A stretch of 64,000 nucleotides of DNA, taken from positions 1 to 64,000 of the IMG/VR virus record IMGVR_UViG_3300019458_000021. One strand, 5' to 3'. Shown here in pieces: positions 34,647-36,725 of the stretch. The notes beneath the pieces are model-generated. The model saw nothing but the letters and a program-made list of their open reading frames with translations. It searched no databases and was not told the DNA's origin. Made by a program: the position numbers and the translations under genes. Numbering within the stretch: the first letter of the stretch is position 1; every line of letters begins with the position of its first letter.

Positions 34647-34965
34647 AAGAGAAGCGTCAGTAGTTAGCAAGGAAACAATCGAAGAACTACTCAAAGAAGC
34701 AGCTCACAACTTCATCTATCCACATGCACGATTCTGCATGTACGACAACGGTGAAGACATGACAGAAGCAGATATGTGGGCAGAAACATGGGAATGGCTT
34801 AATGGCAAGCTCCCAAAGAAAGACAGATATCCAAACCTGGTCGAATATATCAAGGGGTATCTGGCAGATGAAATTCAGAAAGCGAAAGACGATGCAGTCG
34901 AGCCCTACGAAGATGAGTGGCGACCGATGGTCGCGCAATTCCTTGACGAGAAATCATCATGGTAA
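34639..34965 (+). CDS. Hypothetical protein
   Basis: Start moved to MTKREA with RBS AGGAG. Confidence 0.65.
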   Translation: MTKREASVVSKETIEELLKEAAHNFIYPHARFCMYDNGEDMTEADMWAETWEWLNGKLPKKDRYPNLVEYIKGYLADEIQKAKDDAVEPYEDEWRPMVAQFLDEKSSW

Positions 34966-36725
34966 CACACGACGAACAATACATTGCGTGCGTTAAGCAC
35001 ATTCTCGAGCACGGCGTTCAAAAACCAAACCGCACAGGGATCGACACGATCGGTGTGTTCGGCTATCAAATGCGTTTCGATCTGCGCGACTATTCGATTC
35101 CATTACTGACGACCAAGAAGGTGCACACAAAGTCGATAATTCATGAACTATTGTGGATGATGTCAGGTCGCGAAGATGTGAAATATCTTGAACAACACCA
35201 AATCACGATATGGGATGAATGGAAGAATAACAAAAGTCAACTAGGTCCAGTTTACGGCGCCATGTGGAGAGCTTATCCGCCCCCTCCAACGTTTTCACCA
35301 ACGCCCATTCGAAACGTTATAGACAATACGAAGATGCGCTCTTGGCAAGATGTTGTACCAACAATGATCTTATCGGAAGGAAAATATTCAAACAAACGAT
35401 TTACAAACATACAGGGAAGGTGCTATGTTGTTCTTGGTGTAGATGGTTTTCAAAATAATGGGGCTAAAGGACGAACGACAACTTATGCTGTTCGGTTTGA
35501 ACAAAGTGGCTGGATAAAACATGGTGTTAGCACAAGATTGGTTCGTTCAGGTCGATTTGTGGATCAGTCGGTGCCGTCTATCTATGGGATTGGAGCACTT
35601 GGTAACTATCGAAACAAAAAAGAAACGGAACAAAACAAACACTTACGACGAACGTGGGAACTGATGCTGTCTCGATGTTATAATCCTAATGATATAGCTT
35701 TTGAAACACACGGCAAGCAAGGCGTAAAAGTGTGCGAACGCTGGAAAGTTTTGAGCGATTTTCTTGAAGACGTCAAACTGCTGCCCAACTGGTTTGTCAA
35801 GCAACAAAAACAGAACTATGTCCTTGACAAAGACTATTACGGTTCTTCAAAACTTTACCATCCTGAAACGTGTGTGTGGCTTCCAAGATCACACAACAAT
35901 CTTTACCGCAAGGATGCTGTGCCTATTGTTTTATCTTCACCATCTAGCACACTGTTCTTTCCATGTGAAAACACCGCGGCAAAGTTTGTGGGGACAACAG
36001 CAGTAGTAATCAAAGCGAGACGTCTTGGAAAAGTAAAAACACTTATAAACGGTTTTGAGGTTGAACCATTTGTCAATAAAAACTTCGTTGTTCGATATCC
36101 AAACACGATTGATCAAGTCGCTACTATCGTTTGGAAACTGAAGAACACACCAAACGACCGCCGTCTCATTGTGTCGGGTTGGCATCCAGGGCTCTTGCCC
36201 TTCGATGGCATTTCTCCTTCTGAAAACGCTTCTCTTGGTCGTCAAGCATTGCCTCCATGTCACTATACGTTTCAACTATATGCAAAACCACTAACTGTTC
36301 AAGAGAGGTTGTATTCAATGACACGTCTTTATCACATTCCGGATGATGGATCAATGGATAACATAGAACAAATCCTCGATGAAAACAAAGTCCCAAAATA
36401 CGAATTGTCGCTGTTACTGAATCAACGGTCATGTGATGTTGGACTTGGTGTTCCATTTAATATCGTTCAATACAGTCTAATGCTTCGAATGTTTTGCGAG
36501 GTTGCAAATATGTCACCAGGCGATTTCATTTGGAGTGGTGCTGATGTACACATCTATGTTAACCACGTTGAATCTTTGCAAGAACAGATCACAAGAGAAC
36601 CGTATCAGTCGCCAAAATTTCGATTCAACAAAAGGGTTGACTCAATTGATTGTTTCAAGTACGATGACTTCGTTGTTGAAGGGTACATATCTCATCCACC
36701 GGTCAAAATGGACGTAGCTGTATGA
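34959..36725 (+). CDS. thyA: Thymidylate synthase with in-frame insertion of about 275 aa
   Basis: RTGIDT, ELLWMMSG, GPVYG, IDQV, ALPPCH, QRSCDVGLGVPFN. Confidence 0.95.
   Translation: MVTHDEQYIACVKHILEHGVQKPNRTGIDTIGVFGYQMRFDLRDYSIPLLTTKKVHTKSIIHELLWMMSGREDVKYLEQHQITIWDEWKNNKSQLGPVYGAMWRAYPPPPTFSPTPIRNVIDNTKMRSWQDVVPTMILSEGKYSNKRFTNIQGRCYVVLGVDGFQNNGAKGRTTTYAVRFEQSGWIKHGVSTRLVRSGRFVDQSVPSIYGIGALGNYRNKKETEQNKHLRRTWELMLSRCYNPNDIAFETHGKQGVKVCERWKVLSDFLEDVKLLPNWFVKQQKQNYVLDKDYYGSSKLYHPETCVWLPRSHNNLYRKDAVPIVLSSPSSTLFFPCENTAAKFVGTTAVVIKARRLGKVKTLINGFEVEPFVNKNFVVRYPNTIDQVATIVWKLKNTPNDRRLIVSGWHPGLLPFDGISPSENASLGRQALPPCHYTFQLYAKPLTVQERLYSMTRLYHIPDDGSMDNIEQILDENKVPKYELSLLLNQRSCDVGLGVPFNIVQYSLMLRMFCEVANMSPGDFIWSGADVHIYVNHVESLQEQITREPYQSPKFRFNKRVDSIDCFKYDDFVVEGYISHPPVKMDVAV
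35280..36104 (+). mobile_element. Homing-endonuclease-like (HNH-type) domain inserted in frame in thyA
   Basis: TWELMLSRCYNP...GVKVCERW...LDKD...YHPETCVW; no intein or intron motifs recognised. Confidence 0.7.

What the first reader, a model, noticed from the sequence alone, without database searches (positions are those of the whole stretch)
34959..36725. ThyA carries a homing-endonuclease-like domain fused in frame with no recognisable splicing element
About 275 codons are inserted between GPVYGAMWRAYP and TIDQV, a variable loop of ThyA. The insert has HNH-type phage nuclease motifs (SRCYNP, GVKVCERW, LDKD, YHPETCVW). It has no Cys/Ser/Ala intein start and no HN end (ends YPN/T), and I see no group I core motifs. 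Removing it leaves a normal ThyA of about 313 aa with an intact PPCH. Inference: a selfish nuclease persisting as a tolerated internal domain, or an unrecognised splicing element.
Basis: partly seen in the sequence, partly recalled or inferred. Interest (0 to 1): 0.65.

Follow-up and report, generated by a model that had tools for sequence, protein, structure and literature searches.

The report
Homing nuclease embedded in phage ThyA
A jumbo-phage thymidylate synthase gene carries a complete homing-endonuclease-like protein in frame inside a surface loop, with no intron or intein to remove it, and comparison with related phages suggests that this insert moves between thyA genes as a mobile element.

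Summary
Window 34959-36725 (+) is one 588-codon ORF. A normal ThyA (Pfam 1e-92) is interrupted after WRAYP by about 276 codons.

The insert is neither a group I intron nor an intein:
- Rfam finds nothing.
- More than 60 metagenomic and two cultured-phage ThyAs carry a homologous insert at the same site, always in frame.
- dN/dS is 0.04-0.10 along its whole length.
- AlphaFold folds it at pLDDT 95.
- No junction nucleophile is conserved.

The insert equals a whole free-standing PHROG 2081 "HNH endonuclease". It has an SH3-like barrel, a central RCY/LDKDYY domain and an I-HmuI-type NUMOD-like helix-turn-helix.

It behaves as a mobile element:
- Insert presence needs at least 11 changes on the ThyA tree.
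- Insert clades do not follow ThyA clades.
- Two nearly identical phage pairs differ only by the insert plus 60-115 nt of diverged upstream thyA. Identity resumes exactly at the IDQ codons.

Best reading: an in-frame homing element that is not spliced out and is tolerated as an internal domain of a working ThyA.

Caveats. The "HNH" label is unproven, because the canonical His is a Lys and no HNH profile matches. I rate it a new variant of a known kind.

The parts
34959..35279 (+). ThyA N-terminal part (residues 1-107). It holds the dUMP/folate-site residues up to the GPVYG Tyr loop and WRAYP.
   Evidence: Pfam PF00303 and PHROG 160 first stretch. Invariant columns R25, E63, W85, W88 and Y99 in alignment A1.
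35280..35372 (+). Insert linker (residues 108-138), Pro-rich, with one short strand.
   Evidence: AF2 model of the insert: pLDDT 85-97, strand at model residues 10-14. Conserved as protein in the closest homologs.
35373..35555 (+). Insert domain 1 (residues 139-199): SH3/Tudor/KOW-like beta barrel, a presumed DNA-binding module.
   Evidence: VIA-align matches for model 37-97 at Z 4-6.2 to SH3-like barrels, including the Hpy99I N-domain. The same domain is present in free-standing SPG24 gp030. It is absent from the shorter inserts P0078, P0092, P0109 and P0056.
35604..35894 (+). Insert domain 2 (residues 216-312): the central 'RCY ... LDKDYY ... TCVW ... N' domain, the candidate nuclease module. 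It sits where HNH sits in I-HmuI but has no His.
   Evidence: PHROG 2081/953/374/3377 'HNH endonuclease'. No Pfam match. AF2 pLDDT 89 with helices plus a beta-beta-alpha end. Best solved match is PacI 3m7k: Z 5.0, rmsd 3.1, 83 residues aligned. Nearly invariant W, R-C-Y, G..G.V, W, F, D, L-D-K-D, Y and C. hhalign against the I-HmuI family is not significant on its own.
35886..36080 (+). Insert domain 3 (residues 310-374): I-HmuI-type NUMOD-like helix-turn-helix DNA-binding domain.
   Evidence: hmmsearch of profile A2 against PDB hits 1u3e at E 2.3e-4. VIA Z 7.0 to I-HmuI residues 112-174 and Z 5.5 to the I-TevI DNA-binding domain. hhalign 94.5% and 96.6%. PF22083 is found in 20 of 60 homologous inserts.
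36081..36107 (+). Insert C-terminal strand (residues 375-383, ending VVRYPNT) that leads back into ThyA. It contains the nearly invariant Arg.
   Evidence: Model strands at 264-268 and 274-277. R277 of A2 is nearly invariant.
36108..36725 (+). ThyA C-terminal part (residues 384-588 plus stop). It holds IDQ, DRR, PPCH (catalytic Cys), QRSCD and PFN.
   Evidence: Pfam PF00303 second stretch, residues 380-588 against profile 105-266. Invariant columns Q386, R402, C434, R490, S491, D493, N501, H531 and Y533.

Best explanation
The gene encodes one polypeptide. A complete homing-endonuclease-like protein of the PHROG 2081 family is inserted in frame into the variable surface loop of ThyA, between WRxaP and IDQ. 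Its three modules are an SH3-like barrel, a central RCY/LDKDYY domain and an I-HmuI-type helix-turn-helix.

Nothing removes the insert. It is transcribed and translated with thyA, and it folds as an autonomous excursion whose two ends return to the same loop, so ThyA keeps working. These points are inferred from intact catalytic residues, purifying selection and the absence of any other thymidylate synthase in the record.

The inserted module is a selfish mobile element. It recognises insert-less thyA alleles near the conserved GPVYG..WR coding stretch and makes a nick or break. Repair then copies the insert, together with 60-115 nt of the donor's upstream thyA, into the recipient.

Shown here:
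- the anatomy of the insert;
- its conservation in frame;
- the absence of intron and intein features;
- the sporadic distribution;
- near-identical occupied and empty alleles in related phages;
- one-sided co-conversion tracts.

Inferred:
- that the central domain is the nuclease;
- that the fusion protein is the active form;
- that the window's own copy is still active.
For: Anatomy:
- One 588-aa ORF with a split ThyA.
- About 60 ThyAs of 520-620 aa, plus Bacillus phages Kioshi gp41 and 015DV002 gp207, carry the homologous insert at the same site, all in frame.
- The free-standing SPG24 gp030 (248 aa, next to RNR beta) has the same three domains.

Coding, not RNA:
- NG86 dN/dS of the insert is 0.04, 0.05 and 0.10 in three pairs, and low in every third of the insert.
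- AF2 gives pLDDT 95.2 over all 282 residues.
- Only about 36 codons lie outside the part that aligns with the free-standing protein.
- Rfam finds nothing.

Mobility:
- Insert presence needs at least 11 changes on the ThyA tree, 7 of them forced by starred branches.
- Insert clades are discordant with ThyA clades. P0008/P0067 share 77% ThyA identity but 25% insert identity; P0004/P0042 share 71% and 19%. Spearman correlation is 0.25.
- In L010 versus L011 the insert is about 88% identical at nucleotide level and the flanks about 70%. Insert dS is 0.66 while the flanks are saturated.
- L016 (insert) and L017 (no insert) are nearly identical over 5.2 kb except for a diverged tract at nt 201-315 of thyA just upstream of the insert. 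Identity resumes exactly at ATCGATCAG.
- The L014/L015 pair shows the same pattern.
- 25 of 66 insert-bearing alleles have lost the GP of LGPVYG, against 4 of 54 empty alleles. Insert clade B always carries LN[KN] or LRK.
- Degenerate short copies have lost the RCY and LDKD motifs.

Family context:
- PHROG 2081 proteins are the ORFs of group I introns in Bastillevirinae DNA polymerase genes (PMC11878797).
- A homolog lies out of frame inside the KcrB DNA polymerase CDS (hhalign 98.6%).

ThyA function:
- Catalytic columns are invariant.
- dN/dS of the ThyA parts is about 0.03.
- The record has a single ThyA and no ThyX.
Against: - No nuclease activity is shown. The central domain has no Pfam or NCBIfam match.
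- The canonical HNH His is Lys, and no His is invariant in the domain.
- The profile comparison of the central domain alone with the I-HmuI family is not significant. The best solved fold match is weak (PacI, Z 5.0).
- No near-identical empty allele was found for the window's own lineage. The closest relative, L006, also has the insert. IMG/VR relatives without it share only 57-58% identity. Recent mobility is therefore shown for sister lineages, not for this copy.
- Absence of RNA or protein splicing rests on sequence evidence only.
- No full-length model of ThyA plus insert was made.
Confidence: 0.72

Rival explanations
1. Domesticated or inert domain. The insert began as a homing element, but in this phage lineage it is now a fixed, non-mobile DNA-binding domain. 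It might tether dTMP synthesis to DNA or regulate thyA, or it might be kept only because it cannot be deleted precisely. On this reading the central domain is not a nuclease at all.
For: The catalytic His is absent and no nuclease family matches. Only DNA-binding domains are recognised by profile methods, here and in the InterPro results for PHROG 2081 reported in PMC11878797. Both the window and its nearest relative L006 carry the insert, and the insert is at least as conserved as ThyA (dN 0.17 versus 0.23), which is what a selected host function would give. The Rheinheimera phage homologs are annotated as 'putative DNA binding protein'.
Against: The same family is the sole ORF of group I introns and sits in classic free-standing homing positions beside RNR and polymerase genes. 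Filled/empty allele pairs with co-conversion tracts, and insert clades that swap across ThyA backbones, require a DNA-break-driven or equivalent transfer process. Copies that have lost LDKD and RCY sit on long branches, as decaying nucleases would.
Confidence: 0.18
2. Unrecognised splicing element. The insert is removed after translation or after transcription by chemistry that differs from known inteins and group I or II introns.
For: The window's own junction ends in Asn-Thr, which resembles an intein C-terminus. In-frame continuity is also what inteins show. A homolog of the nuclease is nested in what looks like an intein in the KcrB DNA polymerase.
Against: Across 60 inserts no Cys, Ser, Thr or Asn is conserved at either junction. 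There is no Hint or intein Pfam or NCBIfam hit, and no Hint fold in the searches of the pLDDT-95 model. The whole insert aligns with a free-standing protein that needs no splicing. Rfam finds nothing at E up to 10. Every third of the insert evolves as protein, leaving about 110 nt at most for any RNA core. In empty alleles a native loop of 6-25 residues occupies the site, so precise removal is not needed for ThyA to fold.
Confidence: 0.05
3. Separate expression. The nuclease is made on its own from an internal start, or released by proteolysis, and the fusion is only a by-product.
For: Met135 of the window's protein aligns with the start Met of free-standing SPG24 gp030.
Against: That Met is not conserved in the closest homologs. 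No Shine-Dalgarno-like sequence precedes it. There is no stop at the end of the insert in any of the 60 or more homologs, so an internal start would still give a nuclease fused to the C-terminal half of ThyA.
Confidence: 0.05

Closest known systems
I-HmuI (SPO1 gp31.2) and related intron-encoded modular HNH homing endonucleases
   Same: Modular layout: an N-terminal beta DNA-binding module, a middle module and a C-terminal NUMOD-like helix-turn-helix. The C-terminal domain is homologous (hmmsearch E 2.3e-4, hhalign 94.5-96.6%, VIA Z 7.0). Both are found in phages and target nucleotide-metabolism or replication genes.
   Different: I-HmuI has NUMOD4 plus a canonical HNH_3 domain with His75. Here the middle domain has no HNH profile match and carries Lys in that place. 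I-HmuI is encoded in a self-splicing group I intron, whereas this protein is translated as part of the host enzyme.
PHROG 2081 'HNH endonuclease' proteins (free-standing, e.g. Bacillus phage SPG24 gp030; encoded in group I introns of Bastillevirinae DNA polymerase genes, PMC11878797)
   Same: Direct sequence family of the insert (6e-32). Same three domains over the full length. The profile methods that recognise any domain in them see only DNA-binding domains.
   Different: Those copies have their own start and stop and lie between genes or inside a ribozyme. Here start and stop are gone and the protein is a nested domain of ThyA.
ShiLan domain of mycobacteriophage DNA methylases (PMC11855218)
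   Same: A sporadically distributed insertion in a phage enzyme gene. It reads through without stops, has no detectable intron or intein, and is predicted to stay in the host protein as a loop-out.
   Different: In ShiLan the HNH is encoded in another reading frame, and the in-frame product is a featureless hairpin. Here the nuclease-like protein itself is in the host frame and is well folded (pLDDT 95). The host enzyme and the nuclease family also differ.
rps3-LAGLIDADG in-frame fusions in Ophiostomatales mitochondria (Gibb and Hausner 2005, as cited in PMC7902536)
   Same: A homing endonuclease coding sequence fused in frame to a host protein gene without its own splicing element.
   Different: Those are eukaryotic organelle genes with LAGLIDADG enzymes, and the host gene itself lies in a group I intron. 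I did not check whether those insertions are internal domain insertions like this one.
T4 td and Bacillus phage beta22 / Bobb thyA group I introns (I-TevI-type GIY-YIG)
   Same: The same host gene (phage thymidylate synthase) is exploited by a homing element. One-sided exon co-conversion is a known property of I-TevI homing (my own knowledge: Mueller et al. 1996).
   Different: Those are ribozymes with GIY-YIG ORFs at another site in thyA. Here there is no ribozyme, the nuclease family is different and the site is different.

Membership tests
Thymidylate synthase ThyA (PF00303) | Profile match above the curated cut-off over the whole fold | tested here: met
   PF00303 at 1e-92 and 310 bits against a cut-off of 24.3. 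The two stretches together cover profile positions 1-266.
Thymidylate synthase ThyA (PF00303) | Catalytic Cys-His (PCH), Tyr of GPVYG, the dUMP-binding Arg residues and Asn of PFN | tested here: met
   C434, H435, Y99, R25, R401/R402, R490, S491, D493 and N501 are invariant or nearly invariant columns and are present in the window. The mapping to E. coli numbering is from my own knowledge.
Thymidylate synthase ThyA (PF00303) | dTMP synthesis activity of the insert-bearing protein | not testable with these tools
   Inferred only, from dN/dS of about 0.03 in the ThyA parts and from this being the sole TS in a record estimated 68% complete.
Intein (Hint domain) | Cys, Ser or Ala at insert residue 1, and a C-terminal Asn followed by Cys, Ser or Thr, conserved in the family | tested here: not met
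   The insert starts with Pro or Glu. The window's Asn-Thr is not conserved; other ends include PHT, PHH, PTN, GLY, QCF and QLP.
Intein (Hint domain) | Hint fold or intein profile | tested here: not met
   No Pfam or NCBIfam hit. No Hint structure among the Foldseek or VIA matches to a pLDDT-95 model.
Group I intron | Ribozyme core detectable by covariance model | tested here: not met
   Rfam at E up to 10 over 34000-37500, and at gathering threshold over the whole window, gives no intron family. Rfam's model is known to miss divergent introns.
Group I intron | About 200 nt or more of non-protein-coding structured RNA | tested here: not met
   The frame is kept in more than 60 homologs with indels in whole codons. 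dN/dS is 0.17 or lower in each third where dS is not saturated, and pN is far below pS in every third. At most about 110 nt lie outside the region aligned to a free-standing protein.
Group I intron | Splicing of the transcript | not testable with these tools
HNH / His-Me finger nuclease | HNH profile match (PF01844, PF13392 or similar) | tested here: not met
   None at E up to 10 for the window's insert, and none among 60 homologs. By contrast, nearly all of the I-HmuI homologs listed carry PF13392.
HNH / His-Me finger nuclease | Catalytic His at the end of strand 1 | tested here: not met
   The conserved motif is L-D-K-D-Y-Y (Lys), or L-D-R-I-D in the KcrB homolog. No His is invariant in the domain.
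HNH / His-Me finger nuclease | Beta-beta-alpha-metal fold and homology to a known HNH core | tested here: inconclusive
   The model ends in strand-strand-helix. PacI 3m7k gives Z 5.0. The hhalign alignment with the I-HmuI family runs back over the HNH region only when the C-domain is included. Alone it scores 0.4%.
I-HmuI-type NUMOD-like DNA-binding domain (PF22083) | Profile and structure match | tested here: met
   The window's own sequence is below the Pfam threshold. The family profile hits 1u3e at E 2.3e-4. 20 of 60 homologs match PF22083. hhalign gives 94.5-96.6% and VIA gives Z 7.0.
Homing endonuclease gene (operational definition) | Sporadic distribution, occupied and empty alleles in near-identical backgrounds, co-conversion of flanks | tested here: met
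   Met in sister lineages. Not shown for the window's own lineage.
Homing endonuclease gene (operational definition) | Site-specific cleavage of the empty allele | not testable with these tools
   This needs a biochemical assay.
ShiLan-type insertion element | Endonuclease encoded in an alternative frame of an insertion that reads through in the host frame | tested here: not met
   The nuclease-like protein is in the host frame. No long ORF in another frame of the insert matches anything; the other-frame ORFs have at most 112 aa.

The most novel reading that the evidence does not exclude
This is a distinct lifestyle for homing elements in phages: a whole endonuclease living as a nested domain of an essential, dimeric enzyme. 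It needs no promoter, ribosome-binding site, ribozyme or Hint domain. It uses the host gene's expression, and possibly the ThyA dimer to bring two nicking modules together. It carries its own immunity as a recoded upstream flank. Its catalytic module would be a His-less relative of the His-Me finger, or a new nuclease fold, shared by hundreds of phage 'HNH endonuclease' annotations. The fusion may also serve the phage by cutting the thyA of co-infecting competitors.
Probability: 0.35. Interest if true: 0.8.

Novelty: new variant of a known kind. Interest (0 to 1): 0.68.

Why it matters
Homing endonucleases are thought to survive inside genes only by riding on self-splicing introns or inteins, or by sitting between genes. 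This case shows a large, diverse family (more than 60 lineages, including cultured Bacillus phages) that skips splicing and stays in the host enzyme, with sequence footprints that suggest ongoing homing.

- It widens the known ways selfish DNA can colonise essential genes.
- It gives a natural example of a 276-residue, three-domain insertion tolerated in a well-studied enzyme.
- It points to an uncharacterised nuclease-candidate domain that is widely mis-labelled HNH.
- It explains why some phage 'thymidylate synthases' are annotated at twice the normal length.
- The two Bacillus phages make the system testable at the bench.

Tried and rejected
- Nucleotide search of the phage collection with the whole gene: no match.
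- PDB sequence search with the single insert: only chance hits.
- Foldseek against PDB: nothing reached E 1e-3. For the whole insert the best hit was I-HmuI at E 9e-3. For the central domain the hits were noise.
I did not try to obtain reads another way, so no expression or splicing data exist here.
- The search for related loci with the central-domain alignment failed for lack of a conserved word. With the whole protein it found only two insert-less relatives at 57-58% identity.
- Word search restricted to the central domain found only the closest ThyA inserts, so other host proteins with an in-frame copy were not surveyed. The large profile search was not used.
- A spread sample of phage tblastn hits gave free-standing genes, plus one hit inside the KcrB DNA polymerase. 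That hit is out of frame and apparently inside an intein, so it is not a second in-frame host.
- P0101 as a possible 'immune but empty' allele: rejected, because it has the ordinary LGPVYG.
- Internal start at Met135: rejected, because it is not conserved and has no ribosome-binding site.
- The L. casei-type ThyA insertion site: from my own knowledge it lies before GPVYG. That is not this site, though P0117's variant insert is there.
- No full-length fold or dimer model was made.
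Full report
**1. What is there**

The window belongs to an IMG/VR virus record of 237,379 bases, estimated 68% complete. It is therefore a jumbo phage. Positions 34959-36725 (+) form one 588-codon ORF.

Pfam's thymidylate synthase model matches at 1e-92, but in two stretches: residues about 1-106 and 380-588. NCBIfam and PHROG 160 are split the same way.

The intervening residues, about 108-383 (nt 35280-36107), match several PHROG families labelled 'HNH endonuclease'. The best is phrog_2081 at 6e-32. No Pfam or NCBIfam family matches them.

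The neighbouring genes are a Thg1-like gene (33529-34455) and an NAD-dependent DNA ligase (36802-38799). The record holds one ThyA, no ThyX and no second copy of the insert.

**2. It is not an intron**

- A permissive Rfam scan (E up to 10) of 34000-37500 and a gathering-threshold scan of the whole window find no intron family.
- A word-index search returned about 60 ThyAs of 520-620 aa, at 33-72% identity, that cover 99-100% of the query.
- A tblastn of phage genomes found the same arrangement annotated as plain 'thymidylate synthase' in Bacillus phages Kioshi (548 aa) and 015DV002 (564 aa).
- In all of them the insert sits at the same place, after WRxaP and before IDQ, and is in frame. All length differences are whole codons.
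- Nei-Gojobori estimates on three gene pairs give dN/dS of 0.04, 0.05 and 0.10 for the insert. Non-synonymous divergence is far below synonymous divergence in each third of it, and the ThyA parts behave similarly.
- AlphaFold2 with the 60-sequence insert alignment gives mean pLDDT 95.2 with no disordered stretch.
- The free-standing 248-aa protein SPG24 gp030 aligns with nearly the whole insert. At most about 110 nt are left over, too little for a group I core.

**3. It is not an intein**

- No Hint or intein profile matches the window's insert or any of 60 homologs.
- No Hint structure appears in the fold searches.
- The first insert residue is Pro or Glu.
- The last residues vary freely. The window's Asn-Thr is a coincidence of this lineage.
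- Insert-less relatives have a native loop of 6 to about 25 residues at the site. ThyA therefore tolerates variable length here and needs no exact excision.

**4. Anatomy of the insert**

There are three modules.

(a) Residues 139-199 form an SH3/Tudor-like barrel (VIA-align Z 4-6.2). This module is missing from a set of shorter inserts.

(b) Residues 216-312 form the central domain. Its nearly invariant residues are W, R-C-Y, G..G.V, W, F, D, L-D-K-D, Y and C. Folded alone it reaches pLDDT 89 and ends in strand-strand-helix.
- Its best solved match is the HNH restriction enzyme PacI, but only at Z 5.0, rmsd 3.1 and 83 residues aligned. Foldseek finds nothing significant.
- In the ESM Atlas the same fold (TM 0.74-0.87) recurs in a 552-aa viral ThyA cluster, in proteins of 160-210 aa with NUMOD1, NUMOD3 or I-HmuI_NUMOD-like domains, and in DUF7307 and Bro-N proteins.

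(c) Residues 310-374 are homologous to the C-terminal DNA-binding domain of I-HmuI.
- Family profile against PDB: E 2.3e-4.
- VIA Z 7.0 to 1u3e residues 112-174, and Z 5.5 to the I-TevI DNA-binding domain.
- hhalign 94.5% against I-HmuI and 96.6% against an I-HmuI family profile.
- PF22083 is found in 20 of 60 homologs.

**5. Is the central domain an HNH?**

It stands where HNH stands in I-HmuI. The profile-profile alignment extends back over that region when the C-domain anchors it, pairing the conserved Trp and the downstream Asn.

On its own, however, the central domain shows no significant similarity to the I-HmuI family (0.4%). The place of the general-base His is Lys here and Arg in the KcrB homolog.

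From my own knowledge, PacI is a precedent for a beta-beta-alpha-metal nuclease whose cleavage is started by a Tyr rather than a His. That is a lead, not a test.

I therefore do not file the domain as HNH. It is the constant module of a modular family whose other modules are DNA binders, which makes it the candidate catalytic part.

**6. The family behaves as homing endonucleases**

- Homologs lie as free-standing genes directly beside RNR beta and DNA polymerase genes in many phages.
- A 2025 survey found PHROG 2081 proteins as the ORFs of group I introns in Bastillevirinae DNA polymerase genes. It also noted that InterPro recognises only DNA-binding domains in them (PMC11878797).
- In Caulobacter phage KcrB a homolog (hhalign 98.6%) is encoded out of frame inside the DNA polymerase CDS. 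The surrounding in-frame sequence has intein-like ends by eye.

**7. The ThyA insert is mobile**

- On a maximum-likelihood tree of the ThyA parts of 120 proteins, presence of the insert needs at least 11 changes, 7 of them forced by well-supported branches.
- The insert tree has at least four deep clades, and these are scattered over the ThyA tree. P0008 and P0067 share 77% ThyA identity but 25% insert identity. P0004 and P0042 share 71% and 19%. The rank correlation of the two identities is only 0.25.
- The reverse also occurs. In L010 versus L011 the insert is about 88% identical at the nucleotide level while the flanking thyA is about 70%. Insert dS is 0.66 against saturated flanks.
- Three ThyA pairs are almost identical except for the insert.
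- At the DNA level, L016 (insert) and L017 (no insert) are syntenic. They are nearly identical over 5.2 kb apart from a tract at nt 201-315 of thyA that is only about half identical and abuts the insert. Identity returns exactly at ATCGATCAG, the IDQ codons.
- L014 versus L015 repeats the pattern, with a tract at nt 270-330.
- This is what gene conversion from a diverged donor looks like: a one-sided co-conversion tract on the upstream side.
- The converted tract covers the codons of the conserved LGPVYG..WR motif. 25 of 66 occupied alleles have lost the Gly-Pro, against 4 of 54 empty ones. One insert clade always carries LN[KN] or LRK regardless of ThyA background.
- I read this as a recoded recognition or cleavage region that travels with the element and protects occupied alleles. 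That reading is inference.
- Short, long-branched copies that have lost RCY and LDKD (P0056, P0092) look like decaying elements.
- P0117 carries a shorter copy at another site, before LGPVYG.

**8. How it most likely works**

- The element has given up its own expression signals and is made as part of ThyA.
- ThyA folds around it. All catalytic columns are intact, the ThyA parts are under strong purifying selection, and no other thymidylate synthase was found in the record.
- The nuclease-like module, tethered to the enzyme, binds empty thyA alleles in co-infecting relatives and nicks or cuts near the GPVYG-to-IDQ interval.
- Recombinational repair then copies the insert and the upstream flank.
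- ThyA is an obligate dimer (my own knowledge). The fusion would therefore present two modules, which could turn a nickase of the I-HmuI kind into a double-strand cutter. This is speculation.
- A benefit to the phage through interference with competitors, as shown for an intron endonuclease in PhiPA3 (PMC11620839, abstract seen), is possible but untested.

**9. Limits**

- Nuclease activity, the cut site, ThyA activity of the fusion and the absence of splicing all rest on sequence inference.
- For the window's own lineage I found no near-identical empty allele. Its nearest relative, L006, is syntenic at 72% identity and also occupied. That the window's own copy is still active follows only from its intact conserved residues and a dN/dS of 0.04.

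**10. Novelty**

Searches of the paper library found no description of this ThyA insert. The nearest published ideas are:
- the ShiLan domain, an insertion that reads through in frame and hides an out-of-frame HNH (PMC11855218);
- in-frame rps3-LAGLIDADG fusions in fungal mitochondria (PMC7902536).

The kind of thing, a homing element without a splicing vehicle, is therefore known in outline. This variant is new in three respects:
- the folded nuclease-like protein itself is in the host frame, as a nested domain of an essential phage enzyme;
- the family is large;
- there are clear conversion footprints.

Noticed in passing
window 545-29640 (mostly minus strand): A large tRNA array: ARAGORN finds 27 tRNA genes and Rfam 23. 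It includes a tRNA with anticodon CUA (19462-19541, called 'Pyl', i.e. an amber-suppressor type) and one with an odd two-base anticodon call (545-619). The ThyA ORF contains no in-frame TAG, so this does not affect the finding.
   Followed up: no
window 40542-40839 (+): Rfam match to a permuted tmRNA (RF04321, 97 bits, E 1.3e-17) in a phage record.
   Followed up: no
window 33529-34455 (+) and 36802-38799 (+): A Thg1-like tRNA-His guanylyltransferase and an NAD-dependent DNA ligase with BRCT flank thyA. The same Thg1 ... ThyA ... ligase ... DHFR ... Acb1-like order recurs in the related contigs L006, L016 and L017.
   Followed up: partly
L022:1310-4192 and L022:3237-3878 (Caulobacter phage KcrB): The annotated 960-aa DNA polymerase reads through a region whose in-frame sequence has intein-like ends by eye (a Cys start and a His-Asn/Cys end). 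A 213-aa ORF in another frame is homologous to the central and HTH domains of the ThyA insert (hhalign 98.6%) and carries LDRID in place of LDKDY. It looks like an intein with an out-of-frame endonuclease.
   Followed up: partly
P0117 (549 aa, metagenomic ThyA): A shorter copy of the element, lacking the SH3-like barrel, is inserted at a different ThyA site, upstream of LGPVYG. This indicates an independent invasion at a second position in the small domain.
   Followed up: partly
L016 versus L017, 6 to 127 nt upstream of the thyA start (3' end of the NT5C-like gene): A second small patch of dense substitutions (27 in about 120 nt) lies in an otherwise nearly identical 5.2-kb alignment. It is either another mosaic exchange or part of the same conversion event.
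   Followed up: no
window 36186-36245 and about 36290-36400 (ThyA residues about 410-429 and 444-480): Two further lineage-specific loops lie in the ThyA C-terminal half. One is a stretch of about 13 extra residues before PPCH. The other is a segment of about 36 residues after the FQ.Y motif. Both also occur in insert-less relatives, so they belong to ThyA, not to the element. In the P0005/P0043 pair the first loop differs along with the insert.
   Followed up: partly
L001 and L002 (Bacillus phages Kioshi gp41 and 015DV002 gp207): Public records annotate these 548- and 564-aa proteins simply as 'thymidylate synthase', and the nested nuclease-like insert is not mentioned. Both are cultured phages and could serve as experimental systems.
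   Followed up: partly
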